A stretch of 64,000 bases of DNA, taken from NCBI GenBank assembly GCA_950097015.1, contig CATNEN010000038.1, positions 6,944,001 through 7,008,000 on the forward strand, read 5' to 3'. Source of the DNA: Macrostomum hystrix. Taxonomy: Eukaryota > Animalia > Platyhelminthes. The first letter of the stretch is position 1; every line of letters begins with the position of its first letter. The notes below the pieces were generated by a model. It searched no databases and was not told the DNA's origin. It worked only from the letters and a program-made list of their open reading frames with translations. Positions 6,276-49,803 of this stretch are shown here, piece after piece. Position numbers and translations under genes: made by a program.

Positions 6276-8924
6276 TTATCGAATCTGGACGCCAAAGTTG
6301 TCCCGCACGGTGGCGGCAATCTTGGCGTGCAATTGTCTGGTCTCCTCAACTGTGAGGGTGCGTTCGTGAGATCGGTAAGTGATGCGGTAGCAGTGGCTGA
6401 TCCTAGAGTCTGTAGGATGCTGGAACTTGTCAATCAGTGACACCTGCTCAACCAGGTCGCCTGCTATAGACCGAACTACATCGTAGAACTCGTTGTCATG
6501 GAAACTGGTCGGGCCAGACTGGCCGGCTGGCAGCCAGAAGCTCAAATCCAGCGGGCAGGGCGGGTAGGCGCTGATTGGCTTGTAGACAATCGGCCGCCAA
6601 ATATCGGCGCTGCCATCGGCGAACTGGGCAAGGAAGGCTGGGTCGCGGCACCAGAACAGGCGAATGTCAGGCACTCTGAATAGCCGCATAGCCCAGCGCT
6701 CGAGGCCGAGCCCGAAGGCCCAGCCGGTGCGGTTCGGGAGGCCGCAGGCGTCCAGCAGGCGCTGTTCCACGATGCCGCAGCCCAGCATCTCCATCCAGCC
6801 CTCGGACCCTTCGGCAGCAGCCGACTGCGGACGGACCTCCAGTTCCCAGGACGGATGCGTGAACGGAAAATAGGCCGGCACCCAGCGGTAGGCCACGCCC
6901 GGGCCAAACAGACGGCGGGCCAGACCTTCAAGGCAGGACTTCAGCTCGTGCTCCAGCAGCTTGCTGGTCTCAACGCTGTGGCCGGCCTGCGGGAGGCACG
7001 TGCACTTTTAAATTTAACTAGCTGCCTTTGAAATCCGAGTTGATGTCAGTCGAATCTATATTAAGCTCTTTGTCGGTATAGTAACCGCCTAAAGCACTAC
7101 TAGTCACCATATATGTGACTAGTCACCATATAGTCAACATATAGTCACCAACTAGCCCCTGTCAAATCCCAACTAGTAACCTGTCAAATCCCAACTAGCC
7201 CCCTGTCAAATCCCAACTAGCCCCTGTCAAATCCCAACTAGCCCCTGTCAAATCCCAACTAGCCCCTGTCAAATCCCAACTAGCCCCTGTCAAATCCCAA
7301 CTAGCCCCTGTCAAATCCCAACTAGCCCCTGTCAAATCCCAACTAGCCCCTGTCAAATCCCAACTAGCCCCTGTCAAATCCCAACTAGCAACCTGTCAAA
7401 TCCCAACTAGCAACCTGTCAAATCCCAACTAGCAACCTGTCAAATCCCAAATTGCTACCTGTCGAATCTCAAATCGCTACCTGTCAAATACCTAACAGTC
7501 ACCAATCAAAGCAAGTGTCAGTTCAATAACTGGACTTCACCTGCTGGTCCTCCGAGCGTCCCCGGGTCGGATCGAACATCCGCAGGGTGTCAGCCGAATC
7601 CCTGGAGCTGGCAAACAGCTGCTCCTGCGAGTAGATCCGCACTCCCTCCATCTGGTGGAACACAGGAAAATGGCACCGGTCGATCTCGTCTCGTCGATAA
7701 ACATCGCCTACAACTAGGAAGGCGTCCAGGCCCTGACGCAGCAGGTCGCATTGGTGGGCGCTGGTGTGACCGCGCAGCAGGTGCGAGCGGTTCAGGTAGT
7801 AAACATCAGAGGGCCGCCTGCTCGGGTGCTCAGCCGGGATGAGAAGGCTGTCAAAGTTCTGAGCAGGTGTGACTACTGGGCTGAGGTTGTCCACCACGGT
7901 GAATAGCGGGCGCGACCGCGACCTGGTAGAAAGAGTTGTAAATTGAATGCAGGGAACGGACAGCAGGTGGGAGTAGGGAACGGACAGCAGGTGGGAGTAG
8001 GGAACGGACTGCAGGTGGGTGCAGGTAACGGACAGCAGGTAGGAGTAGGAAAAGGACAGCAGGTGGGAGTAGGGAAAGGACAGGTGGGAGTAGGGAAAGG
8101 ACAGAAGGTGGGAGTAGGGAAAGGACAGAAGGTGGGAGTAGGGAAAGGACAGAAGGTGGGAGTAGGGAACGGACTGCAGGTGGGAATAGGGAACGGACTG
8201 CAGGTGGGTGCAGGTAACGGACAGCAGGTGGGAGTAGGGAAAGGACAGCAGGTGGGAGTAGGGAAAGGACAGAAGGTGGGAGTAGGGAAAGGACAGCAGG
8301 TGGGAGTAGGGAAAGGACAGCAGGTGGGAGTAGGGAAAGGACAGAAGGTGGGAGTAGGGAAAGGACAGCAGGTGGGAGTAGGGAAAGGACAGGTGGGAGT
8401 AGGGAAAGGACAGCAGGTGGGAGTAGGGAAAGGACAGGTGGGAGCAGGGAACGGACAGCAGGTGGGAGTAGGGAACGGACAGCAGGTGGGTGCAAGCAAC
8501 GGACAGAAGGTGGGTGCAGGGAACGGACAGGTGGGAAGCGGCATGATGGTAGGGTCGCATAGCAACAGTGATGTTAAGTATGACAATCGCAGTCTCATGC
8601 ATCAGACCTAGTATAAGTGGCATTAAAATGCGCCACAATGCGATTAGTCAGCAGCCAAAGAGGGTGTCCCCGCTGTCGATGAAGTCCACGATCGATCCGC
8701 TCAAGAATGCGATCTGTCACATTCGTGTAATCGTCGCGCTCGAACTCCTGACCGCAGAGGCTCAAAGGCGACTGTTGACTTTGCCGTCTTTGCGAAGCAG
8801 CACTAGTGCTAGAATGATCAGCGGCGCCGCTGTTTGTTGAACTGCTGGCGAGTCGAAACAGAGCAAGTGGCAGCCGGCGTTGCGGCGTCTTGAACTGCGC
8901 CACAGCCCGCAGAATGAAACAATC
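6276..8924 (-). CDS. FARS2: Mitochondrial phenylalanyl-tRNA synthetase; exons 8924-8608, 7922-7541, 6986-6276; no genomic ATG found
   Basis: Motifs [68 protein letters not shown] and a C-terminal FDX-ACB domain (DLSFW...[10 protein letters not shown]). All junctions GT-AG and in frame; 1410 nt including stop. Confidence 0.96.
7150..7490. repeat. Intronic minisatellite, 21-bp unit (FARS2 intron 2)
   Basis: Unit AACTAGCCCCTGTCAAATCCC. Confidence 0.95.
7950..8535. repeat. Intronic minisatellite, 24-bp unit with 21-bp variants (FARS2 intron 1)
   Basis: Unit GTGGGAGTAGGGAAAGGACAGCAG; source of several spurious ORFs. Confidence 0.95.
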
Positions 8925-9635
8925 CTGAAAGAAACAAACCCAATAAAATTGTGTCCATATTCATGTCAACTTTATTGGGACTTTATATATACTGCTAGGA
9001 TTTAGGGGCATGACAGCAATGATTGATCGATTATATATATACTATAGTATCTATATTTTGAGCTTTGCTCCATTGCAGTTGCTTTGCAGTCTGTTGCAGT
9101 CCATTTCAGTGCTTACACAGACCAAACCCTACATTGCTAGTCATAGCAGCTTCTATAAATCACACTCAAATGATTTTCTTTGTTTTCATAAATGTGTTTC
9201 ACTCCAAACTTTTGTTTGAACAGAAGAATTTATGACAGATAATAAAAGCATCATGTAAGTAGTTTTGAAATCTATCAAAAGTAAGTTGCCCTGGACAGGT
9301 GAAATTTTGACATTGGACATGTATGATACAGAATATCTAAGGGGCATGATTAGCCATGCTGTGCCTATAATGCTAGGATTTAGGGGCATGGCAGCAATGT
9401 TTGATTGATTATATATGTACAATAGGCCTAGTTTAGATAGATTAGAAGTTAAAACCAAAACCCTAGTGTTATACCAAAACACCATGGTCTACCTAAATGG
9501 TATAAAAATATAATACTGAATGATATCAACCATAGGCTCTTGCCCTAGCTAGACATAAGCTGTCTATCAACAAGACAATGACCCAATAATATGTATGAGA
9601 TAGCTAAATGTGACAACCCAGATAATGTAAAACTT

Positions 9636-14682: not shown

Positions 14683-16864
14683 ATGGCTGCAAAGAAGCGC
14701 TGGTTGTCTATGGCTGGGGTTGATGACCTTGACGAAGCCACACCTCAGCAGCAGCAGCAGCAGCAGCAGCAGACGATTGAGACGGAGGGTGCCATGCCAC
14801 TGAAGAAGCGCCTCATGCTCCAACTGAAGCACCAGGAGTCTCAGAAGAAGCGCGTCTCCCTTAGTGAGTATTATCGCAAGAAAACTACAAGCGGTTCCAC
14901 TGCGAATGCTGCCGAAACCTCTACCGCTACAATATCCGAAGCTGCGGCCTCGGATGATCGAGATCCCAGCGCTGACGCTGGCGCCGATGATGACATGGAT
15001 ATCGCGTCCAATTGCGACGTTGATGTAGATGTCAGCACGGGCGGCTCCTACGACAAATTCGACATGCTGCCAGCAACGCCTAATAATGATCTCGATGCGT
15101 CTGCCGATGGGGACGTCCCTGGTCTGGACGATGACATTGTCGCTGACGAACCTGTCAGGGGTGACGAACTAGAGCACTCTTCGTCAATGCCCAAAACAGC
15201 AACGTCGGCAACTGCTGGCCAGCTGCAGATAGACGAACTGGGTGAGGCAACCGACGCTCGCGAGTATGTACTGCAACAGCAAAGCCGAAGGCAGAGTCAC
15301 CGTGATCAGCAGCAGCAGCACCATAGCGGTCGTCACGGGGATCGGCATCATCAACGACACGAGAGGCACAAGTCCCACCGACATCATCAGCCCAGTCACG
15401 ATCGGCACGAGCGACGCGCAGGCGATAAGGAAAGTCGCCGTCACCGGCATCGTAAGCACGGTGAGCATCGGCATCGACATCGCGGCGAGAGCGCATGCGG
15501 CAGCGATGAGTCCAGACGCGCGGCCAACGCTTTTGACGCTTTTGTTGAACGTCAGATGCGTAGCATGCGACAGAGGCAGGCCGATAAGGCGCGCGACAGA
15601 AAACAGAACGCCTCCAAGGCCGCTGCCGGCCCCACGCCTGCCGAACTGCTCCGACTGCAGCTGGAGTTGCGAGAAGGAGAAAAGGTGCGGTAGTCTCCTG
15701 CGTTTGTCAAATATATGTCACAAGGTGGGTCAAGGTTAGTTTATTCCCTCGACACAGAGTAGGTCAAGGTCAGTGTCTTGGGTTGCTCACTGTCCTTGTG
15801 GGTCCAGATAAGGCATGTTTAGACTCGTCATCTTGTGTCCAATCACCAGGTGCAATGATGGGTCAGGATACATGTAAGTCATTTAGTAATTATTTTTATG
15901 AACTTCACATAAGATTTAATGAACCTGCAGGTTCAACGTGCCGAAAGCTTTATCTACGGAGATCCGGCAGACGCCGCCGCCCAGCCCATTGTGCCAGTCA
16001 GCAGCTCTTTCATCGATCGAGTTGTTGCCAGCACCAGCGGGGGTGGCCAATCTCACACCACTGGCACCGCCAGTCAGCAACCGCCCCAGCAACGCCAGGT
16101 TGGACTTTTAATTGCCATGCTGGCAGTAGGGGAACATTTGCTAACGTCGAAAATAGTTTTTTTCGCAGTAAATTAGTCACGAGCCTCGGCTAGAATTTTA
16201 GAAGGATCACACACATCTAGAATCGTACCTAAAGCAATAGCTAGAGGTCTCTAATAGAACCAGGAACCGCAACTAGAATCGTTACTTTATCAAGCAGCTA
16301 GAATCATAGCAGGAACCGCAGTTAAAATCCTAACAGGATCCGCAGCTAGAATCGTAGCAGGAACCGCAGTTAAAATCCTAACAGGATCCGCAGCTAGAAT
16401 CGTAGCAGGAACCGCAGCTAGAATCGTAGCAGGAACCGCTGCTAGAATCGTAGCAGGAACCGCAGCTAGAATCGTAGCAGGAACCGCAGTTAGAATCGTA
16501 GCAGGAATAGCAGCTAGAACCACAGCATTAGCGGCTATCATTTCAGGTGGCCGTGGTGAAGCCCCAAATCAGCTCTCTATTAGGTGGCATTGTTCGCCTT
16601 GTGGCAAGCAGTCTGGGCGATGTGCAACGAAATCTGCAGCGCCAGATGTTGCAGCAGCAGCAGCAGCCACTCCCGCCTCCACCGCAGCGGCAAGTTAAGC
16701 CATCGATATCCTCAACAGCCAAGGCGGGAGTTAACAGCGACGGCTCGAGCGGAGACAGCGGGGGCGCGGACGCCAGCGACTTTCTGGGCGTCGCCGGCTA
16801 TGGCAACAACAGCAGTGCCGGTCCAGCCAGGACCTCGAAGTCGTCAAAATCGCGACGGTCTTGA
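14683..16864 (+). CDS. Unknown low-complexity, probably nuclear protein (495 aa); exons 14683-15684, 15931-16098, 16547-16864
   Basis: ATG start, phase-0 GT-AG junctions (AAG|gtgcgg, cag|GTT, CAG|gttgga, tttcag|GTG), AATAAA next to the stop; poly-Q, acidic and His/Arg-rich tracts; motifs KKRWL, PLKKR, KKRVSLSEY. Confidence 0.8.
16190..16520. repeat. Intronic minisatellite, 24-bp unit
   Basis: Unit GCAGCTAGAATCGTAGCAGGAACC. Confidence 0.9.
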
Positions 16865-17050
16865 ATAAACGGATTAAAATGATTGTTAATATTGAAGTGT
16901 TAGTTTTATATGATTCCGCATTTCCCTATATTGTAATAAATTAGTTACTCCCGACGTTAAGCCGATGCTTGCAATTTCTCTTCTTTTAACTAAAATGTTT
17001 CTATTAACAATGATTCCCCTTTAACATAAGAAATTGCACGCTGTTCGCCA

Positions 17051-17591
17051 TAGGGAAAGACCACGTGGTATTTCAAATACCCACTGCCTACACCCCGTTT
17101 GCTCCTAAACTAAATTCCCGCTTCGCCGAAATTCCTGACTCGCCGAATTCCCGATTCACCGAATCCTGATTCAATACATCTTACTTTATCATAAATTTAA
17201 ATTAAACCGCATAACCATTGCCCTCTTTGAGTGTTGGTCAAATATTGGAATTCTTTTTCTGTTGTATTGAAATTAATTAAAAAACTTACTTGAATGAAAT
17301 GCACTTTCTTCATTCATTAACTTGTAAACTTGCTTCTAAACTTTATTAACTTTCTGGAACGTACGAGCGCGTAGATTGAGTGAGCAAAGAAGAACATCAC
17401 AGGTACTTCGGAAAAAGCAAAACTTGCTGGACATCCTTGTATAGCCGAAAATAAAATTGTAATGAGGTACGGTAGCTTAGCAAAAAATGTTCTTAGCAAT
17501 TTTTTCGGCAAAGAGGGAATTCGGCGAATTGGGAATTTTGGCGAATCGGGAGTAAACCGGGTATTTGAAATACTCCCGTGTGGTCTTCCTA
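17051..17591. mobile_element. Composite or nested MITE-like element
   Basis: Outer inverted ends TAGGGAAAGACCAC..GTATTTCAAATACCC / GGGTATTTGAAATAC..GTGGTCTTCCTA; inner inverted subterminal repeats TTCCCGATTCGCCGAA-like at 17095-17165 and 17515-17560. Confidence 0.6.
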
Positions 17592-18485
17592 CTGTAAAAA
17601 TTGTTACGGTCTACCAAATGCCTCCTAATTATCGTTAGCTTGTTCATTGTATTATTGCTAGCTGTCTATTATAGTTGACAAACTATTGCAATCGGATTGT
17701 GTGTGCTAAACTGCGCCAGATAATAAACTAACTTTTGTTATTTTTCTTTCGTATAAATTTGACTCTACAATGTGTTCAATTAATTTGTAGTCCTGCGTTC
17801 TGTATAGAAAGAGAAATAGGACTTGTGACTTGTGTCTCAATTTGTTCAAACTTTAGTGTCAAATAATTAATTTATTAACCCGCTCGTGTTTTGTTTTGCT
17901 TTTCTTCAAAAAGCATGTAAGCCACTATTGTAGGAGTCACTAAATATTACTTCATTTCGTCTGTTTAACCACAATTTACTGATTGGTTGGCTGTTTGGGG
18001 GTGGGTGTCCGATATTATGTACATTATAACAACCATCCCACTCAAATAGCCAGCCAATCAGGTATTTCTGGTTGATAAAACTGCTTTACGTTTTCTGTTA
18101 TTAAATTTCAATTATTGTATGATCAGCCCAATTGTAAAATTTCTAATACGATTCTATCTACCCTTATCTGCTCTTCTATTTATAATTTCATGTTTTGCAT
18201 CAGTGACTATGCTTGCTTGTTTATCTCATATTATTTACATTTTCATTTCTGCTAACAAAAACAGCATGGTCATTGCATTACCATCGGCTATTTTTGCTGA
18301 CTTGTTTCATAACAGTGTTGCTTGCCAATTAGTTAGACTTGTTAATAAACAAAATGTTATCACTTAATTTTTGAAGGCCTTATTTTTTTATTAACTGGTT
18401 TTCCTCGGGGCGTCAAAAGTATATATTTTAGACAGCCACTAGTATAAATCAACTAGTATAATCAACTCCTCAACACCCACTGGTT

Positions 18486-19165
18486 CACTCCCCAGCCCTT
18501 CACTACTCAACCCTTCACTCCCCAACCCTTCACTCCCCAAGTCTTTACTCCCCAACCCTTCACTACTCAACCCTTCACTACTCAACCCTTCACTCCCCAA
18601 GTCTTTACTCCCCAACCCTTCACTCCCCAAGTCTTTACTCCCCAACCCTTCACTACTCAACCCTTCACTCCCCAACCCTTCACTCCCCAAGTCTTTACTC
18701 CCCAACCCTTCACTCCCCAAGTCTTTACTCCTCAACCCTTCACTCCCCAACCCTTCACTACTCAACCCTTCACTCCCCAACCCTTCACTACTCAACCCTT
18801 CACTCCCCAATTCTTCACTACTCAACCCTTCACTCCCCAACCCTTCACTACTCAACCCTTCACTCCCCAACCCTTCACTACTCAACCCTTCACTCCCCAA
18901 CCCTTCACTACTCAACCCTTCACTACTCAACCCTTCACTCCCCAACCCTTCACTACTCAACCCTTCACTCCCCAACCCTTCACTACTCAACCCTTCACTC
19001 CCCAATTCTTCACTACTCAACCCTTCACTCCCCAACCCTTCACTACTCAACCCTTCACTCCCCAACCCTTCACTACTCAACCCTTCACTCCCCAACCCTT
19101 CACTACTCAACCCTTCACTCCCCAATCCTTCACTCCTCAACTCTTTACTCCTCAACCCGTCACTC
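18486..19165. repeat. Minisatellite, 15-bp unit with 30-bp higher order
   Basis: CTTCACTCCCCAACC / CTTCACTACTCAACC; ends about 165 nt before the DAP3 first acceptor. Confidence 0.96.
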
Positions 19166-19331
19166 TTCAGTTCGCCACTATTTTTGCCACCAAATTCTAC
19201 CAGCTTAAACTCACACAAACTCAAAATATTCGTTACCACATGCATTCACTTTCAAAATCTTAGAGCTTTTAGTGTTAAAATCCGCCAAAAAAATATAATT
19301 GTATTGTATTATTGTCGTTTCTTATCCGCAG

Positions 19332-21852
19332 CTCACCCGCGCCTGTACTTGGCTGCTGAGGCAGCAGCGACTCCTCGGCTGTCAGCAGCAGCGCTGCGGA
19401 GCCGCCACAGCCGCCCTCCTGACAGACGAATCCGCGCCCGAGCGGCACTCGCTGCAGCGGCACGTTGGCCTGCTGTACAGACCGGATGAGGCCGACTGGA
19501 ACCTGGTCACGAAGCATTTCTGCCGGCCCGAACTGCGCAGGTGAAAATGATTTCACTAATCCCTGGTTTGCTTATTTGAATGTACTTTTACTTGGCCATT
19601 TCCCAATCCGCTCTCGGTCCTCTCGCGCTGCAGGCTGTTCGACACCCTCGGCCAGCGGGCCATCATGGTGCGCCGGCCGGCGCTGGAGATCAACGAGCGG
19701 CTGCGAGGCCACACCGGAGCTGGCCGCCCCTGCCTGCGGTTCGTGCTCTACGGCCAGCGGGGCAGTGGCAAGTCCTTGCAGGTGCGAGCCTTCGACAGGC
19801 ACTGTACCAGATCCGCCAGTATTTCAGTCCCAATTGCCAGTATTTCATTACCAAATCCGTTAGTATTTCAGTCCCAATTGCCAGTATTTCATTACCAAAT
19901 CCGTTAGTATTTCAGTCCCAATTGCCAGTATTTCAGTCCCAAATTCCGCCAGTTTCTCAACCCGCCTCTCCCACAGATGGGTCACGTGGCCGCCGCGTGC
20001 CACCGCCAGGGCTGGCTGGTGCTGAGCGTGCACAGTCCGCACCTGTGGATGCGCAACAGCCGGGAGCTGCACGAGAGCGCCCACCGGCCTGGCATGTTCG
20101 ACACAGCCGGCTACGGCTGCAGCTGGCTGCGCCACTTCTACGCCATGAATGAGGCCGCCTTCGCCAGCCTGCGCGTCACCAAGGAGCTGCGCTGGAACGC
20201 CAAGGAGTCAACGCCAGAAGGCGCCAGCTGGAAGGAGGTGCTTGACTACGCCCTGGCTAGGCCCAGGTACAGTTGCGCCGCTGTACAGTTCCTGGTGGAC
20301 GAGATCAAGCTGGGCACTGTGCCGATGCCCACACTAGTCTGCTTCGAGGTGGTCAACTGTCTCTGGTGGCACCGGTCTGGTATCAAGAATGAGGTCATTC
20401 AAAGGACGCCTGCGTAAGTTTCTCGGGTGTTTCTCGGCAGTCTCACACCTCGGTGGGGTTGGATTTTCAGGAGCTGCGAATTCTCACACCTCGGTGGGGT
20501 TGGATTTTCAGGAGCTGCGAATTCTCACGCCTCGGTGGGGTTGGATTTTCAGGAGCTGCGAATTCTCACACCTCGGTGGGGTTGGATTTTCAGGAGCTGC
20601 GAATTCTCACGCCTCGGTGGGATTGGATTTTCAGGAGCTGCGAATTCTCACACCTCGGTGTGGTTGGAATTTCAGGAGCTGCGAATTCTCACGCCTCGGT
20701 GGGATTGGAATTTCAGGAGCTGCGAATTCTCACACCTCGGTGGGGTTGGAATTTCAGGAGCTGCGAATTCTCACGCCTCGGTGGGATTGGATTTTCAGGA
20801 GCTGCGAATTCTCACACCTCGGTGGGGTTGAATTTTCATGAGCTGCGAATTCTGACACCTCGGTGGGGTTGAATTTTCAGGAGCTGCGAATACTCACACC
20901 TCGGTGTGGTTGGAATTTCAGGAGCTGCGAATTCTCACACCTCGGTGGGGTTGGATTTTCAGGAGCTGCGAATTCTCACACCTCGGTGGGGTTGGATTTT
21001 CAGGAGCTGCGAATTCTCACACCTCGGTGTGGTTGGAATTTCAGGAGCTGCGAATTCTCACACCTCGGTGGGGTTGGATTTTCAGGAGCTGCGAATTCTC
21101 ACACCTCGGTGGGGTTGAATTTTCAGGAGCTGCGAATTCTCACACCTCGGTGGGGTTGAATTTTCAGGAGCTGCGAATTCTCACACCTCGGTGTGGTTGG
21201 AATTTCAGGAGCTGCGAATTCTCACACCTCGGTGGGATTGGATTTTCAGGAGCTGCGAATTCTCACACCTCGGTGGGGTTGGATTTTCAGGAGCTGCGAA
21301 TTCTCACACCTCGGTGGGATTGGATTTTCAGGAGCTGCGAATTCTCACACCTCGGTGGGGTTGGAATTTCAGGAGCTGCGAATTCTCACACCTCGGTGGG
21401 GTTCGATTTTCACACCTCAGGTGTAACTTTCAAGCTGATCTCATCCACTATTCAAACCTCCGTACAGCAAGGCCGAAGATCCGGTGTGGCGTGCTGACAT
21501 CACGGCCAAGCAGCTGACCCTGCTAGACGCCTTCAAGCAGCTGCTGGACACGGACTGGCAGAACGGAGCGGCTGTCATGTCCGTTTCGCCGCAGGGTGCA
21601 ATCTTAGATCGTCGCCGGGACTGGATGCCGCGCCAGTTGCTAGGCGACGAAGGCTTCGCCTACCTGGACCCATTCCTGCCCGTGTACGTTGAGCCGTACG
21701 GCCCAGCTGAGATGAGCAATATGCTCAACTGGTACAGCGAAGCCGGCTGGCTCACTAGCGAGGCTTCGGCAACCGACGCTGGCCGAGCCGAGATGGCCTT
21801 CCTGTCTGACGGTAACGCTGGCGAACTGATGCGAATCAGCGGCGAGTGGTGA
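19332..21852 (+). CDS. DAP3: Mitochondrial small-subunit ribosomal protein mS29 / DAP3; exons 19332-19540, 19634-19781, 19977-20413, 21468-21852; no genomic ATG found
   Basis: IMVRRPALE, P-loop LYGQRGSGKS, HVAAACHRQGWLVLSV...HLWMRN, DWQNGAAV, PRQLLGDEGFAYLDPFLPVYVEPY, FLSDGN; junctions in frame, 1179 nt including stop. Confidence 0.94.
19812..19950. repeat. Intronic tandem repeat, 44-bp unit x about 3 (DAP3 intron 2)
   Basis: CCGTTAGTATTTCAGTCCCAATTGCCAGTATTTCATTACCAAAT. Confidence 0.88.
20441..21420. repeat. Intronic minisatellite, 41-bp unit, about 24 copies (DAP3 intron 3)
   Basis: Unit CTCACACCTCGGTGGGGTTGGATTTTCAGGAGCTGCGAATT. Confidence 0.97.
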
Positions 21853-22029
21853 CAGAGTCATCACTCGTGTGAACTGCTAGAATTAAGCATAATGGAAATA
21901 AAATTGTTTGAAACGGTCGTTAATTACGCTGTAGCATTTTTTATCGCCTGGAAATTATTTCCATGCTGAATCAAAACGACTCAAATTTGCTGGACCTTGA
22001 AAGAGTTTGTCACTTTGGGCAGTATCAGA

Positions 22030-22477: not shown

Positions 22478-22790
22478 ACCCTCCGTTTGTGTCTTCTGTC
22501 TGCTCACCCTCCGTTTGTGTCTTCTGTCTACTCACCCTCCGTTTGTGTCTTCTGTCTGCTCACCCTCCGTTTGTGTCTTCTGTCTGCTCACCCTCCGTTT
22601 GTGTCTTCTGTCTGCTCACCCTCCGTTTGTGTCTTCTGTCTACTCACCCTCCGTTTGTGTATTCTGTCTACTCACCCTCCGTTTGTGTATTCTGTCTACT
22701 CACCCTCCGTTTGTGTATTCTGTCTACTCACCCTCCGTTTGTGTCTTCTGTCTGCTCACCCTCCGTTTGTGTCTTCTGTCTACTGTCTTC
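22478..22790. repeat. Minisatellite, 28-bp unit, about 11 copies
   Basis: Unit CACCCTCCGTTTGTGTCTTCTGTCTGCT between the convergent DAP3 and SLC17A9 genes. Confidence 0.95.
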
Positions 22791-23587: not shown

Positions 23588-25938
23588 CTACCTGACCCTG
23601 AGCCTCTTGCCGGAGCCAAACACCAGGTACACCACAGCGCCAACCACACAGATAGCGGCGGTGTTAAGAAACACTGCAGGCCAGCTCTTTGTGGTCTCCA
23701 GGATGTGACCGACCATGTAGACGCCGACAAAGCCCGGAACAGCGCCGAAGATGTTCATGACGCCGAATAGGGCGCCGCCGTGCTCAGGCAGCAGATCGTG
23801 CGGGTTGACCAGGATGCCGGAGTTGTGAAAGCCGCATGCGCAGATGGCTAGGGCCATGCAGGCCAGAGATTGCGCGTAGCTGTGCGCGTGGCACAACAGG
23901 TACAGAAACAGCGCCGTCAGCAGCAAACTGGCGCCCTCTAGCAGCTTTCTGACTGCGGTGACGCTCATCCGTTGCCTTAGCAACCAGTCGGCCAGCAGGC
24001 CGGAGCCCAGCGACGCCGGGATGGTCACCATCCAGGGCACCACGTTGAACACCCAGGCTCTTGCGTCGGGGAAATTGTCGTGAAAATAGGTCGGTATCCA
24101 GCTGAGCAGGATGAAGAAGGAATTGGCGTGGGCGAAGTGGCCGACAATCATGGCCCTGGATGGATGTGTCGGAAGAGGGCAAACAACTTATTACTAAAGT
24201 GTGCTCAGCTTGAAGTAAAAGACAAAGAAGAGCACTCTACTCACCAGAATGCAGGCGATTTCACAACAGCAGCCCAAGGCACGCCTTCTTTCTCACTGTA
24301 AGCAGCAGCCGTCCTCCGCGCCTCCTTATCCAGTTCAGACCGGTCGGCTAGGCTGGCCATGTGGGCCCCGCTGAAAGACATCTGCAGTCCAGATGGCGCC
24401 GATGGATTGTCTAAGGCCGCGACGGTTGAAGCACCCGACGGCGGAGGTACCGGTGACGGCTTCGATGCAGAGCTAGCAGCAACTTCTATGGCTTCTAATG
24501 CGTCCAAAGCGACGGCATAGTCGATGACTCGCTGGCGCCGGCGCAGCAGGGTGGATCGAACCACGGACGCCCAGGCAAGGCCGCACAAACCGATGATGAT
24601 GAAAGCGGAGCGCCAACCGTAGCTTTCAACGATGAGGGAGCCGATGCTGCCGCACAGCAGAGTGCTATAGATGTTAAATATACAGGATGCGGGATTAGAT
24701 TTCCAATTTGTCTAGGACAATAATTGACACAGAGGATAGAGTAGCATGGAGTGTAACCCTACAATCTAGACCTGCTATGCTACAATAATAATAATAATAA
24801 TAATAATAGTTAACACCAGCCCCGATCGGGCCAGATCTGCAGCCCACAGCATAGCAGCAGCTATTGCGCTACGTACGACCGTTTAGTCCATGAACTGGGA
24901 GGGCGCCACACCCACCCTCAATTACCCCAGCTGATGCTGCTTCCCATTTAACAGCTGGGTGAGCTGAAGTAATGCAGAGTTGTGTTGCTTAATGACGTAG
25001 ATTGTTTTACTGGAGTTCGGAATCGAACCCCGACCTTTAGGTATTGAGCGGGACACTATAACTAGGCTACAACCCCTGCTGCAATGCAGTTATAAATATA
25101 TACCATAGATATTCTATTATGGGGACTTCAACATCAAATACTTATTGTGTCTATGACCCTCGGCAGCCAATAGAATGGAGTCGGGGGAGGGGGGGAAATA
25201 TCTCTATCGGATGAGTTTCCCTAATGAAGGATTGGATTATAGCCCAACTTACAACATCACTATTCTTATTTTGGGACACCAATCATTCTGCTGTTAACGA
25301 AGTCAAAGACAAACCCGATGTGAGCACCGCAGCTGCCGAAGCTCCAGGTGTAAGCTCGCTCCTTTAGCTGCACCCGGTGGGCCATGAGGCTGCTCATGCC
25401 AGGATAGTGAAAGCCCTGGAAAGCGCCTGCCAGTACGCGGCATACAAGGAATGCAGTCAGGACTAGCCCGCCATCGTCTGACAGCCAGGGCAGCAGGGGG
25501 AAGACCATGGTTACAGCGGCCCAGCCAAACGCAGCCATAGTGACAACGAACTCTCCGCCAATCTTATCGGCTAGGTAGCCGCCTAGGAACTGAGTGCAGG
25601 TGTAGCCCCAAAAAAATGCCCCCAGAACCATGCCAGAGGTGCTCTTGCTCCAGTTGAGCTCAGTGCTAATAGGCACATTGCATAGAGGCATTATGGTGCG
25701 ACTCAAGTACAGACAGGCTGAGCCAACTAGAAGCGAAGACATCCACTGCTTGCGTTCGAGTCTGCCAGAAAGTTTGAGTAAGACCAAAATTAGTAGCGAG
25801 CCAGATAGGGTCATGTACAGTGTCATGTACCAGCTTCTTTATACAAGAAAAAAAGGGTTTAATAATGACTCACCTGCTCCATAACCCAGCTTTGCACTTA
25901 GTGATCAAGGGGCCACCCTTATCTTGAGTATCAGACAT
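23588..25938 (-). CDS. SLC17A9: Vesicular nucleotide transporter-like MFS/ACS transporter (499 aa); exons 25938-25874, 25761-25315, 24664-24245, 24155-23588
   Basis: LWSR|LERKQW, YLSRTIMPLC, GMVLGAFFWGY.TQFLGGYLADKIGGE, QGFHYP, FFILLSWIPTYFHDNFPDARAWVFNVVPW, FHNSGILVNPHDL...GALFGVMN; junctions in frame, 1500 nt. Confidence 0.92.
24784..25076 (-). mobile_element. CORE-type tRNA SINE with (TTA)n tail, in SLC17A9 intron 2
   Basis: Reverse complement of GGGGTTGTAGCCTAGT...GGTCGGGGTTCGATTCC...CACCCAGCTGTTAAATGGG; same family as 62211. Confidence 0.88.
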
Positions 25939-39185: not shown

Positions 39186-42100
39186 TTATTCTTCCTCGAT
39201 ATCATCTTGCCAGAGACTCGGCAGCTTCTGCGAAGGTTGGACGACTAGTTTCATCTTTCCCGCATGGACAATCTTCCCCTTACCTTGATCTTTACCTTCA
39301 ACCTGACGGACAACTTCGTAGTTTACTGGAGATGTCTTACGCACTACTCTGAATGGGCCAGTCCATGGAGCATGGTGCTTGTGCGACCAACGAGAATCCC
39401 GCTGTCGCAGAGCTAAAGGAGGGGTAAAAACCCACACCAATGCATTCTCATGGAATCTTTGCTTCTTGATATTTCTATCGTAGTACCTCTTTTGAACTCT
39501 TTGGACAGCTTTGGTGGCTTTCCTGACTGTCTCATAAGCGTTAATTAGTTGCTCTTTAATCGCGTCAGCAAAGGTAGTAGGAGTTAATTTAGGCTCAGGC
39601 TCGCGGTACACAACGTCTACTGGCAGCACCATCTCGCGACCAGTCATTAGATAGTGCGGTGTGAAACCGGTAGTCGCGTGGACTGAACTTCGGTAGGCCA
39701 TGAGACAATGGGGAATTGCATCCTCCCAGTCCTCAGGATCAACATTTTGAAGATAACAACGCAAGATATTATGAAGCGTACGGTGGAACCGTTCCACCAG
39801 TCCATCACACTGAGGATGAAATGCTGTTGTGCGTGTCTTTTGGATGTTAAGTAGTTTACAGAGCTTCCTAATCAGTTTGCCATCTACGCCTTTGCCTCTA
39901 TCAGAGTGCAAGATGTGGGGCGCTCCAAACCGGCTTATCCAGTGCATGAAAAGTGCATTTGCGATGGTTTCTGCGCGTTCGTCCTGCAACGGGACAAGCT
40001 CGACCCATTTGCTAAAGTAATCCATAATTGTAAGTAGACGGTCGTTGCCTTGGCGCGATGTGGCTATTTTCACGACATCAATCGCCACTCGTTGCATCGG
40101 GAAGCCAGATGACATAGGACGGAGCGGAGCTTTAGAGGCGGATGTTGGTTTTGCTCTTTGGCACTGGACGCATTCTTTTGTGTACAGCATGACGTCATCT
40201 ATTAGTTTTGGCCAATAAAATCGTGCTTTAACTGCTTCAGCAGTCTTCTTTATGCCAAAATGACCAAGTTGATGTATTTCTTCAATAATCTCTTGTCTTT
40301 TAATTCTTGGGAGCACTAGTATTGGTTTTGAATCTATAACACGATGCATAACGCCGTTGATAAAGCATAGATCATTAACCTTATTCATTAACATTATGCT
40401 CTCTGGTGCCATAGTTGTCTTGTCTTCCTCAGTCAATTCCGTATTTCCCTGAGCGAGTTTTCTGTAAACTGGTCCAATACCATCATCTCTTAGCTGCAAC
40501 ACTCTCAAAGATGTTTCGTCGATATCTGTGTCAACTGAGTCTTCGTCACTTATATCTTCGACATCCGAGGTTCGCGCAACAAGTTGCTGCTTCCTACGTG
40601 ATGGAACAACTGCATTACAGGTCTCATTGTTGCTAGTTTGACACTCAGCATCTACTCTACGCGGCTTGTCCGGCTGACATGCTTCACAAAACCGCGGACA
40701 TCTGGACAGAGCGTCAGCGTTCATATGCATTTTACCTGGTCGGTGGATAATTTCGAAGTCAAATTCTTGTAATGACTCAAGCCAGCGTGCTAACTGTCCA
40801 GTCGGCTCCTTGAAACTTAGTAAGTGGGTTAGTGCAGCATGGTCAACGCGAATTATAAACTTTTTACCAGCTAGATAAGATCTGAATTTTTTGCACGATT
40901 CGACTACAGCTAATAGTTCCCTCCTAGTCACACAGTAATTTCTTTCTGCAGAATTCAAAGCTCGGCTGCTGTAGGCGATAACCTTCTCTTGTCCTTTTTG
41001 AATCTGCGACAGCACACTACCTACTCCGAAACCGCTAGCATCAGTATCTAAAATAAATTGACTATTAATATCTGAAGTGTCTGGCAAGGCAAGAATCGGC
41101 GCTGAAGTTAACCTGTCTTTCAGCGAACAGAAACTTTGTTCTTGTTCATTAGTCCAGATAAATTGTGTATTTTTTAGTGTTAGTCGGCGCAAAGGCTCTG
41201 CTATTGTGGAGAAACTTTTAATAAATCTTCTATAATAAGAGGCTAAACCTAGGAAACTCTGGACATCCTTAACCGATTGCGGTCGAGGCCAATCATGGAC
41301 TGCTTTGACCTTCTCATCATCAACCGAAATGCCTTGGGGTGTTATTTTATGTCCTAGAATTTTTATTGACTTAGATGCAAAGATACATTTGCTAGGCTTT
41401 AAGCGAAGATTTGCATTTTGGAGGCGCTGGAGGACTTGAGCAAGATTACAATTATGCTCGTCTAATGTTCTGCCCATTACAACAATGTCATCGATATACA
41501 CAAGACAAGCTTCCCACTTCAGACCGCGCAGCACCAGGTCCATCAGCCGTTGAAACGTAGCTGGGGCATTTTTCAGCCCAAATGGCATGACCCTGAATTG
41601 GTACAGACCATGGTGGCACAGGAAAGCTGTCTTCTCACTGTCATGTTCATCAAGTTCGACCTGCCAGTATCCTGACTGCATATCCATGGCTGAAAAATAT
41701 ATGTTGCCAGCTAGAGCATCCAGAGTGTCGTCCACTCTAGGCATTGGATAGGCATCAGACTTTGTAACATTGTTTAATTTTCGATAATCTATGCAAAATC
41801 TAAGGTTACCATCTTTCTTGCGAACTAGCACTACTGCAGCTGCCCATGGAGATGATGATGGAACAATGACGTTATCTTGGATCATGTCGTCAATAATCTT
41901 TTTCTGTTCATTTATAGTGGTCAAGTTGGATCTCCTTAGTGTTTCCTTGGTTGGCAACGCATCTCCTGTATCGATTTTATGTTTCAGCAAATTCGCTCTA
42001 CCTAAATTACTACCTGATGCGAATACATCTTTAAATTGATTTAATACTGCTTCTACATCATTTGCTTCTGATGGTGACAAGTCTTTTGATATGTTAAACT

Positions 42101-42983
42101 TTGTTTGGTTAGACTGTGTACTAGTTTTATTGTCTAGGTTACTCTCTTCACTAATTATGTCTTCATTTTCACTTTGGTTTGGATTTAAGCTTCCAATGAT
42201 GCACACATTTCCTTTTTGATCTAGTGGGATAAACTTAGCAATGACTAGACCGGCTCTTAATAGTAACTCTCTGTTAACATTACTATTGACAACATTAACA
42301 TTCATGCCTTCATTTTTTATTAGATGAATACCTCTGGCAAGCAAGAGACCTGGGACATGGTGATTTGATTCAACAATGCCTGGAGCAAGTGATTGATCAG
42401 GAATTTTTGGCTTAATAGAAATATCAAGAGTCTGGCCTGGTGGCACAGTTGTAGTTTCGGCCACAACAAGGACTTGAAACCTTGGGACTTCCATGGTTTT
42501 CCGAGTTGGAATTGATTTGTTATGAGCATTGAAAGTAATAATACCTTGTGCTGGGTGGATAGAAACATCAAATTGCTTTAAGAAATCTAAACCTATAATT
42601 ACATTGTGCTGGATATTGCTACACACATATACTTCATGTGCTAAATTGAGTTGGCCAAATGAAAAGGTAACTTTTTTCTTTCCTAAAACCTTTAATTCTT
42701 CGCCATTGGCAACTGTTAACTGAACTTCTGCCTTGATAAGATTTAGTCTAGGTTGATTAAGGACATCAGCTGAAATGATTGTGACACTAGAGCCTGTGTC
42801 TATTAGGCAAGGTATTTTTTTAGACGCTACAATTGCATTTACATATATAGCATTATTAAAATCAAGATTTACATTAAGGATTTCCCTAGCTCCTTGCTTC
42901 CGGTGATCAGCTACAGTGGTGGGGCAGTTGGCACTCTTGGCTGGAATCTGCCCCGTGATCCAGCCTGATTGGCGTTTGGGCAA
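39186..42983 (-). CDS. pol: Pol polyprotein (protease, RT, RNase H, integrase), expressed by -1 frameshift
   Basis: CLIDTGSS; RFCIDYRKLN, MPFGLKNAPATFQ, YIDD; FILDTDAS, RELLAV; H..GH...CVQC, D-D-E core, GPF motif; ORF begins at TTG, not ATG. Confidence 0.97.
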   Translation of the reverse strand: MPKRQSGWITGQIPAKSANCPTTVADHRKQGAREILNVNLDFNNAIYVNAIVASKKIPCLIDTGSSVTIISADVLNQPRLNLIKAEVQLTVANGEELKVLGKKKVTFSFGQLNLAHEVYVCSNIQHNVIIGLDFLKQFDVSIHPAQGIITFNAHNKSIPTRKTMEVPRFQVLVVAETTTVPPGQTLDISIKPKIPDQSLAPGIVESNHHVPGLLLARGIHLIKNEGMNVNVVNSNVNRELLLRAGLVIAKFIPLDQKGNVCIIGSLNPNQSENEDIISEESNLDNKTSTQSNQTKFNISKDLSPSEANDVEAVLNQFKDVFASGSNLGRANLLKHKIDTGDALPTKETLRRSNLTTINEQKKIIDDMIQDNVIVPSSSPWAAAVVLVRKKDGNLRFCIDYRKLNNVTKSDAYPMPRVDDTLDALAGNIYFSAMDMQSGYWQVELDEHDSEKTAFLCHHGLYQFRVMPFGLKNAPATFQRLMDLVLRGLKWEACLVYIDDIVVMGRTLDEHNCNLAQVLQRLQNANLRLKPSKCIFASKSIKILGHKITPQGISVDDEKVKAVHDWPRPQSVKDVQSFLGLASYYRRFIKSFSTIAEPLRRLTLKNTQFIWTNEQEQSFCSLKDRLTSAPILALPDTSDINSQFILDTDASGFGVGSVLSQIQKGQEKVIAYSSRALNSAERNYCVTRRELLAVVESCKKFRSYLAGKKFIIRVDHAALTHLLSFKEPTGQLARWLESLQEFDFEIIHRPGKMHMNADALSRCPRFCEACQPDKPRRVDAECQTSNNETCNAVVPSRRKQQLVARTSDVEDISDEDSVDTDIDETSLRVLQLRDDGIGPVYRKLAQGNTELTEEDKTTMAPESIMLMNKVNDLCFINGVMHRVIDSKPILVLPRIKRQEIIEEIHQLGHFGIKKTAEAVKARFYWPKLIDDVMLYTKECVQCQRAKPTSASKAPLRPMSSGFPMQRVAIDVVKIATSRQGNDRLLTIMDYFSKWVELVPLQDERAETIANALFMHWISRFGAPHILHSDRGKGVDGKLIRKLCKLLNIQKTRTTAFHPQCDGLVERFHRTLHNILRCYLQNVDPEDWEDAIPHCLMAYRSSVHATTGFTPHYLMTGREMVLPVDVVYREPEPKLTPTTFADAIKEQLINAYETVRKATKAVQRVQKRYYDRNIKKQRFHENALVWVFTPPLALRQRDSRWSHKHHAPWTGPFRVVRKTSPVNYEVVRQVEGKDQGKGKIVHAGKMKLVVQPSQKLPSLWQDDIEEE

Positions 42984-44233
42984 TTCCTATTTATGTGCCC
43001 ATGTTGACCACATCCATAGCATTTCCCTTGGTTCCTGCTCTGGTGCAGTTGGCGCTGTGGCTGGTTCAGTAGTGCTGGTTGATAAGGCCTTGCATTTACA
43101 GATGTTTTAGTAGTTGCTTGCATGTGGTTGGATTGAGAGTCAATTGAATTGCATTGCTGACTTCCCATATGTGGGTAAATTGGCTTAGTGTTTCTTATTA
43201 TATTGCTTCTTTGTGCACTATGTGTAGATTGACTTTGAAGTAGCAACTGTGTCTCTCGAACTTGTTGCGCCAGCTGTAGGGCTTGTTCTGGTGTCTCAAG
43301 GTGCAATTGGTTAGACAAATACTCTGTTACCTTTAAGTCACCAATACCTGCAATAAATTGGTCAAGCACCATAGTTTGGACTACTTCACTATTGGCATTT
43401 TCTGGATAAGCTTGAATGGCTAGATTTTGTAAGTTTGTCAAGAATTGCTCAAATGTTTCATTAGGCTTCCTAGTTAGGGTCCGAACTTCTCTTCTAAGAA
43501 CAATACTAGTTTTCTCACCTTGTCTACTCTTTAAAAATTGCACACATAAGTCATAGGTAGCATTTGGCAGTTGTTCAAGAGGTGTACCTAGAGGCATACC
43601 TGCTGATGCACATGCATTTGCCAACCAGGCTCTATAAGAACTAAAGACTGGACCTAAGAAAGCAACAAGTGTTTGAATTTTGATAGCATCAGTCAAGCTA
43701 GGGAATCTGCAAAGATAATTATCGATTCTAGCAATGAAATCAGAAAAGTCTTCCTTGCCATTAAATGGTGCTGGCTTAGGCACAGGAGGAATCTGGTAAA
43801 ATGTTGGCATAGGCTCAATGCTAGTGTGCTTTTGTGCTTGAAAAACTTGAGGCACTGGGCCTAAGAAAAGGCTAGGATTGGTAGCATTGGTTGGCTCTGA
43901 ATCGGCAATACATGATGCTTCATCTAAAAATGGATTAGTGCTTCTTGATGGATTGTGGTTTATCCACTCTTGAACTCTCATATTTTCTTGTGCAGATGAT
44001 GATGGAACATATGGTTCTCTATGACCATAATCTATATGGAAAGGATTTGTTTGTATTGTTGGTTCAGTTCTATTGATTTGTTCTGGTGGGTTAAAGAATG
44101 AATAGTCTGCATTTGGGTTTGACTGGAAGTCACCAGATTGGCCTGGCCAAGGGTTGGATTGAATTGGCACAGGTGCTCTCTGAACTGATCGATTTCTTAA
44201 TTCAATTGTGTCCATTAAGTGTTGAGACATCAC
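42911..44233 (-). CDS. gag: Gag with a single CCHC zinc knuckle
   Basis: PAPFNGKEDF, ETFEQFLTNLQNLA.QAYP, VLDQFIAGI, CYGCGQHGHINRNC. Confidence 0.93.
   Translation of the reverse strand: MMSQHLMDTIELRNRSVQRAPVPIQSNPWPGQSGDFQSNPNADYSFFNPPEQINRTEPTIQTNPFHIDYGHREPYVPSSSAQENMRVQEWINHNPSRSTNPFLDEASCIADSEPTNATNPSLFLGPVPQVFQAQKHTSIEPMPTFYQIPPVPKPAPFNGKEDFSDFIARIDNYLCRFPSLTDAIKIQTLVAFLGPVFSSYRAWLANACASAGMPLGTPLEQLPNATYDLCVQFLKSRQGEKTSIVLRREVRTLTRKPNETFEQFLTNLQNLAIQAYPENANSEVVQTMVLDQFIAGIGDLKVTEYLSNQLHLETPEQALQLAQQVRETQLLLQSQSTHSAQRSNIIRNTKPIYPHMGSQQCNSIDSQSNHMQATTKTSVNARPYQPALLNQPQRQLHQSRNQGKCYGCGQHGHINRNCPNANQAGSRGRFQPRVPTAPPL
42921..42980 (-). promoter_or_regulatory. -1 programmed ribosomal frameshift signal (slippery heptamer + H-type pseudoknot)
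   Basis: C_CCA_AAC in gag phase, 8-nt spacer, stem 1 GGCUGGA/UCCAGCC, stem 2 GGGGCAG/CUGCCCC. Confidence 0.85.
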
Positions 44234-48600: not shown

Positions 48601-49770
48601 ATCCACGCCGAGAACCTGATGCTTCGCGGCTGCAAGCTGAAGAACACGGAGAGCATCGTCGGGTTTGTGATCTACGCCGGCCAGGAGACAAAGGCGTCGC
48701 TGAACAACCAGGGCGCCAGGTTCAAGCGAAGCAAACTGGAGCAGCAGATTAATAAAAGCGTCATTTGGTGCATCCTGCTGTTATTCATCATGTGCATCAT
48801 AGGAGCTGTTGGTGAGCAGATAACAAGTCAAAGTACAAGTTCACAGCTTGTCGATTTCAGACGGAGATAAAAAACATGGCTAACTACGAGTAATTCACTC
48901 TCAACTGCAGCAAATGGAATCTGGACAGCCAGCTTCACCGACACTTCGGCGATCATGTTCTTGGCGCTGGTCAGCGGCAGCACAACATCATCGCCTGCCA
49001 TGCAAGCTTTCATCAACTTCTGGACTTACGTAATCATCTACCAGGTAACCAAATTGGTCTACTAACAGAAGAACCTGGGCTGCACATTCTGAAATGCGAG
49101 AAAAAAGACTATCAAAAAATGCTACCCTTATTGACACCTTCAAACCGTGAAACTCAGGCTATGATACCTTTGGGACTGTACCTGACCATCGAGTTTGTCA
49201 AGATGGGCCAGATCATGTACATTGAGAACGACATGGAACTGTACGATCCGGTGCGCAACACCATGGCAGAGTGCAAGGACTGGAACATCACGGAGGACCT
49301 CGGCCAAATCCAGTATGTGTTCTGCGACAAGACTGGCACCCTGACTGAGAACGAGATGGTTGTGAAGCGCTGCTCAATCAATGGTATCGACTATGCGGAA
49401 GGAAGTGAGTTCGTGTGAATTTAGCGGCTTATCGGTAACGTGCCCGGCTCTTGACAAAGCCACATTTATTTCGGGTTGCCTGGCGATAAGAAGTCAGGGC
49501 AGATCGCTTAAAGAATCACTTGCCTGGCGCTTAAAGAACTCTTTATCTTATCCACGCAGAAGTGACCATGGCTAACGGAAGCCAGACAGTCAGCAATGCC
49601 TCGAACGGTGGTGCCACAGCGACGACGCGCTCGGGTAGAACTCCGCGCGACGTTTCGCCGATCGCCTCGGCAACATCAAGACCCTCAAGGGCCAGCGCTT
49701 CCACAGCGCAGAAGATTCCAATGGAGCGCTTGCAGAGAAAGATTGGCCAAGTGTTTTCCGAAAAGCAACC

Positions 49771-49803
<33 letters not shown>

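What the first reader, a model, noticed from the sequence alone, without database searches (positions are those of the whole stretch)
19300..19400. DAP3 has no genomic start codon: initiator AUG probably donated by a trans-spliced leader
Seen: the first coding exon begins right after a U-rich acceptor (TTTCTTATCCGCAG|CTC ACC CGC) in phase 0. The first in-frame ATG is about 80 codons later, inside the conserved MVRRPALE region. Adding one Met gives MLTRACTWLLRQQRLLG..., an Arg-rich, acid-free mitochondrial presequence and a full-length 393-aa mS29. Established: flatworm spliced leaders end in AUG, and that AUG can act as the initiator. Inference: synthesis and mitochondrial targeting of this protein depend on SL trans-splicing.
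Basis: partly seen in the sequence, partly recalled or inferred. Interest (0 to 1): 0.82.

Follow-up and report, generated by a model that had tools for sequence, protein, structure and literature searches.

The report
Flatworm DAP3 gene lacking own start codon
In this Macrostomum flatworm the gene for mitochondrial ribosomal protein mS29 (DAP3) has no start codon of its own and most likely borrows the AUG at the end of the trans-spliced leader, a mechanism already known in flatworms, so this is one more ordinary example.

Summary
A four-exon mS29/DAP3 gene lies at 19332-21852 (+). Its first exon begins directly after a pyrimidine-rich CAG acceptor. An in-frame TAA lies 11 codons upstream, with no ATG between. 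The first in-frame genomic ATG (19665) sits inside the conserved MVRRPALE motif.

Exon 1 is coding:
- it has coding-type codon-position GC;
- it is 74% identical to M. lignano mS29;
- it carries the N-terminal mS29 motif found in non-flatworm orthologues.

The genome holds at least 19 spliced-leader RNA genes. Their exon matches the published Macrostomum leader, ending ATG|GTAAG. All five public M. lignano mS29 models also lack a Met, and GenBank marks its three records 'partial'. No credible upstream cis exon supplies an ATG.

The reading is therefore well supported but indirect (about 0.75).

The mechanism is known (Cheng et al. 2006). This scan already holds 81 notes of the same pattern elsewhere in this genome; one (LTV1) was followed up, and its follow-up reports RNA support. 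FARS2 in this window shows the same pattern.

Verdict: a new member of a known kind, of low to moderate interest.

The parts
19296..19298 (+). In-frame TAA stop, 11 codons upstream of exon 1. It closes the frame, and no ATG lies between it and the exon.
19312..19331 (+). Pyrimidine-rich tract plus CAG 3' splice acceptor; proposed SL trans-splice acceptor, phase 0.
   Evidence: 76% pyrimidine and 53% T over -18..-2. It is the first AG after the tract and is at least as pyrimidine-rich as the gene's three cis acceptors. It matches the published YTNCAG trans-acceptor motif (PMC8629364) at 5 of 6 positions.
19332..19540 (+). DAP3/mS29 exon 1: presequence-like N-terminus plus the conserved N-terminal mS29 motif. 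It contains no in-frame ATG.
   Evidence: codon-position GC 0.72/0.51/0.81; 46/62 residues identical to M. lignano P0113.
19634..19781 (+). Exon 2: MVRRPALE motif and P-loop GQRGSGKS. It contains the first in-frame genomic ATG, at 19665-19667.
   Evidence: PF10236, E 2.7e-7; 43/49 identical.
19977..20413 (+). Exon 3, DAP3 domain core.
   Evidence: PF10236, E 2.9e-21; 120/145 identical to M. lignano.
21468..21852 (+). Exon 4, ending in TGA at 21850-52. An AATAAA signal follows at 21897-21902.
   Evidence: PF10236, E 1.1e-10; 109/127 identical.
18484..19165 (.). 30-nt minisatellite (22.7 copies) in the presumed outron, 170 nt upstream of the acceptor.
20441..21412 (.). 41-nt minisatellite (23.7 copies) that fills intron 3.

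Best explanation
The DAP3/mS29 pre-mRNA is transcribed with an AT-rich outron. The spliceosome joins the 35-nt Macrostomum spliced leader, which ends in AUG, to the acceptor at 19331|19332. The leader's terminal AUG then lies directly in frame before codon CTC (Leu). It acts as the initiator and gives a 393-aa precursor. The first ~27-32 residues of that precursor (LTRACTWLLRQQRLLGCQQQRCGAATAAL, Arg-rich and free of acidic residues) would serve as the mitochondrial presequence. Shown here: the gene model, the lack of a genomic ATG, the coding nature of exon 1, and AUG-terminated SL RNA genes in this genome. Inferred: that the SL is joined at 19332, that translation starts at its AUG, and that the N-terminus targets mitochondria.
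For: (1) Gene model. Pfam DAP3 hits exons 2-4. All four exons are collinear with M. lignano mS29 P0113, with single bridging residues at the split codons.
(2) No start codon. TAA lies at 19296-98 and there is no in-frame ATG until 19665. The only ATG in exon 1 is out of frame.
(3) Exon 1 is coding. Its codon-position GC matches the other exons and GC steps from 0.31 to 0.68 at 19332. It is 74% identical to M. lignano. Residues 27-59 align with mollusc mS29 residues 50-81 (BLASTP E 9e-4) and with a non-flatworm mS29 profile (hhalign E 0.0038), including the invariant P, G and Y. Translation must therefore begin upstream of codon 27.
(4) SL machinery. The genome has 19 exact copies of the leader's 3' end plus the GTAAG donor. 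One copy read in full shows the published 35-nt leader ending ATG (PMC8629364). The 109-nt SL RNA folds into hairpins, z = -3.6.
(5) Orthologues. All five M. lignano models start without Met (RSIANW... or LLSRSIANW...). The GenBank records are named 'partial'. That annotation sets 5' ends from SL-containing reads and calls ORFs with TransDecoder (PMC5730564).
(6) No cis alternative. The 2.4 kb upstream has only two GTRAG donors, and neither is preceded by a phase-0 ATG frame. The single ATG|GT (18266) has a non-consensus donor (GTCATT) and is no more than chance expects.
(7) Prior. 45% of conserved M. lignano genes are trans-spliced. In S. mansoni more than 40 cDNAs need the SL AUG (PMC9851317, citing Cheng 2006).
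Against: The M. lignano models do not fix the junction. The GenBank models start two codons inside the position equivalent to 19332, and the UniProt models start one codon before it. If the Ser codon of the UniProt models lies directly before the first Arg codon of the GenBank models, a phase-0 AG cannot sit there. The exact M. lignano acceptor and its phase therefore remain unknown.

The acceptor matches the published YTNCAG motif at only 5 of 6 positions. Phase 0 has a one-in-three chance expectation. A short 5' exon with a non-consensus donor cannot be excluded from DNA alone. The presequence call rests on composition only, because no targeting predictor was available.
Confidence: 0.75

Rival explanations
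1. A conventional cis-spliced 5' exon, not recognised here, lies upstream. It supplies an in-frame ATG and is spliced to the acceptor at 19331|19332.
For: An acceptor alone does not distinguish cis- from trans-splicing. A bare ATG|GT exists at 18266-18268, and 27 ATG...|GT phase-0 combinations exist in 16865-19331. The UniProt M. lignano models carry three extra residues (LLS) upstream of the GenBank start. Those residues could come from an upstream exon.
Against: None of the 27 candidates has a GT[AG]AG donor. The two consensus donors in the interval (17380, 17917) have no phase-0 ATG frame in front of them. One ATGGT in 2.4 kb is at or below chance. The upstream region is AT-rich, with no exon-like GC island apart from a minisatellite. 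RNA-seq-guided M. lignano models at three loci contain no such exon and remain 5'-partial.
Confidence: 0.12
2. Translation starts without an AUG upstream of the conserved motif (a near-cognate codon in an unspliced 5' region). Alternatively it starts at the internal ATG at 19665 and gives an N-terminally truncated protein, with exon 1 acting as 5' UTR.
For: The in-frame stretch between the TAA and the acceptor begins with TTG (19299). The internal ATG is conserved in all orthologues.
Against: The internal Met lies inside the conserved (C/A)(L/I)MVR(K/R)PALE motif in every orthologue. About 80-100 residues precede it in the complete orthologues read (P0004, P0009, P0116). A start there would remove the conserved N-terminal motif and any presequence. 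An out-of-frame ATG at 19486 would intercept scanning ribosomes first. Exon 1 shows coding-type codon bias and protein-level conservation. The sharp GC step at 19332 argues that the exon starts there.
Confidence: 0.06
3. The SL is used but joined at one of the downstream in-frame CAG acceptors within exon 1 (exon start 19365, 19368, 19386, 19389 or 19392). This is a variant of the main reading and gives a shorter presequence.
For: Five further AGs in 19363-19391 are also in phase 0 because of in-frame CAG runs. The M. lignano GenBank models start a little inside the equivalent exon.
Against: These sites lie in GC-rich coding sequence with poor pyrimidine/T tracts (T fraction 0.24-0.29, against 0.53 at 19331). 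The GC step marks 19332 as the exon boundary.
Confidence: 0.05

Closest known systems
[quoted passage not shown]
   Same: The SL exon ends in AUG followed by a GU donor. The recipient gene lacks its own start codon. The acceptor lies in phase 0, so the leader's AUG opens the conserved ORF.
   Different: That work was shown with cDNAs and translation assays in Schistosoma. Here the species is a free-living Macrostomum, the gene is mS29, and no cDNA or translation data could be reached.
M. lignano mS29 models (GenBank PAA49658.1/PAA79137.1 and PAA67428.1, named 'partial'; UniProt A0A1I8FZM8 and A0A1I8G659)
   Same: They are orthologues with 74-88% identity per exon. They have the same architecture, no initiator Met, and their first Met in the same ALMVRRPALE motif.
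   Different: Their N-termini differ by 2-3 residues in where the models begin, and by two small in-frame indels. Their DNA could not be read here, so the acceptor phase in M. lignano is unknown.
Other ATG-less genes noted by this scan in the same genome (81 notes, e.g. LTV1 s1-351214; FARS2 in this window, s1-851560)
   Same: They show the same pattern: a phase-0 acceptor, an upstream in-frame stop and no ATG. I verified FARS2 myself.
   Different: They are different genes. The LTV1 follow-up reports RNA support, which I did not check and could not obtain for DAP3.
SL-resolved operons of M. lignano (Ustyantsev and Berezikov 2021, PMC8629364)
   Same: A same-strand upstream gene ends at 16864, and DAP3 begins at an SL-type acceptor.
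   Different: The distance is about 2.47 kb, or roughly 1.2 kb after subtracting the minisatellite and an inverted-repeat element. That is above the published 1-kb repeat-adjusted rule, so DAP3 is probably a monocistronic trans-spliced gene.

Membership tests
Genes whose initiator AUG is donated by the flatworm spliced leader | The organism has an SL RNA whose leader exon ends in AUG, followed directly by a GU donor. | tested here: met
   The genome has 19 exact copies of the leader's 3' end plus GTAAG. The full published 35-nt leader was read in L002 (PMC8629364). The SL RNA fold has z = -3.6.
Genes whose initiator AUG is donated by the flatworm spliced leader | The mature mRNA carries the SL joined to the first exon (SL-exon junction seen in cDNA or RNA-seq). 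| not testable with these tools
No transcript-derived protein of this species was found. The only indirect support is the 5'-partial M. lignano models.
Genes whose initiator AUG is donated by the flatworm spliced leader | The acceptor is in phase 0 with the conserved ORF. | tested here: met
   AG at 19330-31 puts the exon start at 19332, which is codon position 1 of the frame that continues into the DAP3 domain. This holds only if that acceptor is the one used.
Genes whose initiator AUG is donated by the flatworm spliced leader | There is no genomic in-frame AUG upstream of conserved coding sequence. | tested here: met
   TAA at 19296-98; first in-frame ATG at 19665. Conserved residues 27-59 of exon 1 lie upstream of it.
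Genes whose initiator AUG is donated by the flatworm spliced leader | Translation initiates at the SL AUG. | not testable with these tools
   This needs ribosome profiling or a reporter assay.
mS29 / DAP3 (Pfam PF10236) | A DAP3 domain above the gathering score, with a P-loop. | tested here: met
   Searched exon by exon: 30.6, 76.4 and 41.7 bits against a cut-off of 23.1. The P-loop GQRGSGKS is in exon 2. The best relative is M. lignano mS29, E 6e-81.
Cleavable mitochondrial presequence | An N-terminal 20-40 residues that are Arg-rich, free of acidic residues and amphipathic. | tested here: inconclusive
   4 Arg and 0 Asp/Glu in residues 1-32. The helical hydrophobic moment is 0.66 for the first 11-mer. 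No dedicated predictor or experiment was available.
Downstream gene of an SL-resolved operon | A repeat-adjusted distance to the upstream same-strand gene below 1 kb (PMC8629364). | tested here: inconclusive
   The raw distance is 2467 nt. It is about 1.2 kb after removing the 682-nt minisatellite and the ~550-nt inverted-repeat element. That is just above the threshold, and the 3' UTR end of the upstream gene is unknown.

The most novel reading that the evidence does not exclude
Loss of the genomic start codon may be systematic for nuclear-encoded mitochondrial proteins in Macrostomum. In this one window both mS29 and mitochondrial PheRS (FARS2) lack one, and other scan notes name MPV17L2 and CCDC51. 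If so, translation of a set of presequence-bearing proteins, and hence mitochondrial biogenesis, would be tied to SL trans-splicing.
Probability: 0.12. Interest if true: 0.55.

Novelty: new member of a known kind. Interest (0 to 1): 0.25.

Why it matters
If true, mS29 cannot be made in this flatworm without trans-splicing. That is a clean example for annotation pipelines, which otherwise mark such genes as partial or truncate them to an internal Met, as the M. lignano records show. The mechanism has been established in flatworms since 2006 and appears common in this genome. The value is practical: correct gene models and a candidate reporter for SL function. It is not a conceptual advance.

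Tried and rejected
- A word search with the exon 1 peptide found nothing in its 38-120 aa length window.
- A word search with the full-length M. lignano orthologue found no other Macrostomum or transcript-derived protein. I had hoped to see proteins carrying the leader-encoded residues in front of the exon-1 peptide.
- Supplements of PMC8629364, PMC5730564 and PMC5816591 hold no entry for Mlig006505, Mlig014544 or DAP3.
- A PDB sequence search with exon 1 gave no hit.
- The window contains no SL-like sequence, and the genome has no second copy or retrocopy of exon 1.
- I considered extending the exon 3 frame to satisfy the length window of the word search. The frame stops at the donor, so this was dropped.
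- I left the third word search unused. The M. lignano cluster has only UniRef and NCBI members, so fragments from RNA assemblies seemed unlikely.
The joined protein and the joined SL-exon sequence were neither built nor searched.
- The match GCATGTAAGCC at 17913-17923 resembles the SL donor region, but it lacks one G and leaves no ATG before a GT. I treat it as chance.

Full report
**What is there**

The window comes from a Macrostomum flatworm. Earlier scan notes name M. hystrix, which I did not check. What I saw is that the closest database relative is M. lignano. The assembly is 220 Mb in 42 contigs.

On the + strand there is a four-exon gene:
- exon 1, 19332-19540;
- exon 2, 19634-19781;
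- exon 3, 19977-20413;
- exon 4, 21468-21852, ending in TGA, with AATAAA at 21897-21902.

The donors are GTGAAA, GTGCGA and GTAAGT, and every acceptor is CAG.

The joined protein was not built or searched. Exons 2, 3 and 4 each pass the Pfam DAP3 (PF10236) cut-off, with E-values 2.7e-7, 2.9e-21 and 1.1e-10. Exon 2 holds the P-loop GQRGSGKS. Each exon aligns collinearly with M. lignano mS29 P0113:
- exon 1 residues 7-68 to P0113 6-69;
- exon 2 to 72-120;
- exon 3 to 121-265;
- exon 4 to 267-393.

Identity is 74-88%, and single residues bridge the two split codons. That confirms the splice junctions.

**The observation**

Exon 1 starts directly after ttgtcgtttcttatccgcag. Reading the exon's frame upstream gives a TAA at 19296-98 and no ATG. 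The first in-frame genomic ATG is at 19665-67, inside AIMVRRPALE. The only ATG within exon 1 (19486) is out of frame. GC content rises from 0.31 in the 100 nt before 19332 to 0.68 in exon 1. The gene encodes 392 residues, or 393 with one added Met.

**Is exon 1 translated?**

Its GC by codon position (0.72/0.51/0.81) matches exons 2-4, and the other two frames contain stops.

Residues 27-59 (AALLTDESAPERHSLQRHVGLLYRPDEADWNLV) align with residues 50-81 of a mollusc mS29 (BLASTP E 9e-4). They also align with columns 42-73 of a profile built from nine non-flatworm mS29 proteins (hhalign E 0.0038). That alignment includes the invariant Pro, Gly and Tyr of the profile's N-terminal region.

These E-values are modest, but the match is collinear and lies just upstream of the Pfam domain. 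In the complete orthologues I read, the Met of the MVR(K/R)PALE motif is internal, with about 80-100 residues before it. Translation must therefore begin upstream of codon 27 of exon 1, where the genome offers no ATG.

**Is an AUG-ending leader available?**

The published 35-nt M. lignano leader ends in ATG (PMC8629364). Its last 20 nt plus the GTAAG donor occur 19 times without mismatch in this genome. They sit in arrays spaced about 11.6-11.7 kb apart on three contigs, plus one single copy. One copy read in full shows the whole published leader followed by GTAAG. The 109-nt SL RNA folds into hairpins with z = -3.6. The condition 'organism lacks an AUG-terminated SL' is therefore not met. The leader is also open in the frame of its terminal ATG (my own reading of the sequence).

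**Orthologue evidence**

A search of 1.84 billion representatives with exon 3 found one close relative, P0001 (81% identical, 396 aa). Its cluster holds four M. lignano mS29 sequences covering five public records: two UniProt and three GenBank.
- The UniProt sequences begin LLSRSIANWLL...
- The GenBank sequences (PAA49658.1/PAA79137.1 and PAA67428.1) begin RSIANWLL... and are named 'partial'.

None has a Met before ALMVRRPALE.

The GenBank annotation was built from RNA-seq-guided transcripts. Their 5' ends were cut at peaks of SL-containing reads, and ORFs were called by TransDecoder (PMC5730564). An ORF that is open to the very 5' end of such a transcript is what an SL-trimmed mRNA with a leader-borne start codon would look like.

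Caveat: the two sets of models start at different residues, and neither start aligns exactly with 19332. A Ser codon cannot end in AG. If the UniProt LLS is read from the genome directly before the Arg codon, the GenBank start cannot be a phase-0 acceptor. I could not read the M. lignano DNA to settle this.

**Cis alternatives**

The previous same-strand gene stops at 16864. Between it and 19331 there are only two GT[AG]AG donors (17380 and 17917), and neither has a phase-0 ATG frame in front of it. Of the 27 ATG...|GT phase-0 combinations, none has a consensus donor. The single bare ATG|GT (18266) is followed by GTCATT and is no more than chance expects in 2.4 kb.

The interval is AT-rich. 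It contains a 30-nt minisatellite (18484-19165) and an inverted-repeat element (about 17112-17551). After subtracting these, the distance to the upstream gene is about 1.2 kb, just above the published 1-kb operon rule. DAP3 is thus more likely a monocistronic trans-spliced gene than an operon member, but this remains open.

**What could not be done**

The decisive evidence is a transcript that shows the leader joined at 19332, and it was out of reach:
- the word searches found no transcript-derived protein of this or any other Macrostomum species;
- paper supplements held nothing on the orthologous genes.

**How it most likely works**

The pre-mRNA's outron is removed by trans-splicing of the SL at 19331|19332. 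The SL's terminal AUG lies in frame before Leu-Thr-Arg... and starts translation. The first ~30 residues have 4 Arg and no acidic residue, and the first turns have a high helical moment. They would act as a cleavable mitochondrial presequence ahead of the conserved mature N-terminus, which begins near TDESAPERH. Only the initiator codon is donated; the presequence itself is genomic. I put this at about 0.75. The alternatives are an unseen cis 5' exon (0.12), non-AUG or internal initiation (0.06), and SL use at a downstream in-frame CAG (0.05).

**Comparison with what is known, and novelty**

Use of the flatworm SL's 3' AUG as initiator was shown by Cheng et al. 2006. As summarised in PMC9851317, the SL AUG is in frame in 28% of S. 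mansoni trans-spliced transcripts, and more than 40 cDNAs need it. [quoted passage not shown]

This scan already holds 81 notes of the same pattern in this genome. One of them (LTV1) has a follow-up that reports RNA support, which I did not check. In this window FARS2 shows the identical arrangement on the minus strand: the acceptor tttctttcag before 8924, an in-frame stop 12 codons upstream, no ATG, and tRNA-synt_2d plus FDX-ACB domains in a downstream exon.

DAP3 is therefore a new member of a known kind. Interest is low to moderate. The only less ordinary angle is that both ATG-less genes in this window encode mitochondrial proteins, which I did not test for enrichment.

Noticed in passing
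window 8610-8999 (- strand); downstream exon at 6279-6896 (-): Mitochondrial PheRS (FARS2) shows the same arrangement. Its first exon starts at 8924 after tttctttcag, an in-frame stop lies 12 codons upstream, there is no ATG, and the N-terminus is Arg-rich ([25 protein letters not shown]...). A later exon carries tRNA-synt_2d plus FDX-ACB (E 1.8e-22 and 4.4e-16).
   Followed up: partly
G000 contigs C15, C17 and C42 (loci L002-L006); C1:16047928 (L001): SL RNA genes lie in arrays with a spacing of about 11.6-11.7 kb, in both orientations on C17, plus a single copy on C1. One near-copy on C37 has a damaged donor (GGTACA). What the ~11.6-kb repeat unit contains was not examined.
   Followed up: no
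window 39189-44233 (- strand): A long open pol-type ORF (1265 aa) has protease, reverse transcriptase, RNase H and integrase domains of the Ty3/Gypsy kind. A 440-aa ORF with no Pfam hit (possibly gag) precedes it. I describe it only; LTRs were not sought.
   Followed up: no
window 16261-16519, 18484-19165, 19805-19944, 20441-21412, 22478-22784: Minisatellites with periods of 24, 30, 44, 41 and 28 nt fill the introns and flanks of DAP3 and its neighbour. Intron 3 of DAP3 is almost entirely a 41-nt array that is open in all three frames.
   Followed up: partly
window 17112-17551: A pair of 48-nt inverted repeats (81% complementary, 340 nt apart) lies in the DAP3 upstream region, perhaps the ends of a MITE-like insertion. 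Whether it counts as a repeat decides if the repeat-adjusted distance to the upstream gene approaches the 1-kb operon rule.
   Followed up: partly
window 17913-17923: GCATGTAAGCC resembles the SL exon-donor junction (GCATG|GTAAG) with one G missing. It is probably chance, and it leaves no ATG in front of a GT.
   Followed up: partly
M. lignano proteins P0001/P0115 versus P0113/P0114: The UniProt and GenBank models of the same M. lignano mS29 loci differ by three N-terminal residues (LLS). No model has a Met. One UniProt model also has three extra C-terminal residues (VTC).
   Followed up: partly
window 14683-16864 (+); 23588-25826 (-); 48112-52378 (+): Neighbouring genes: a low-complexity Gln/His-rich gene with its own ATG at 14684 and no Pfam hit; an MFS transporter on the minus strand; and a P-type cation ATPase fragment on the plus strand.
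   Followed up: no
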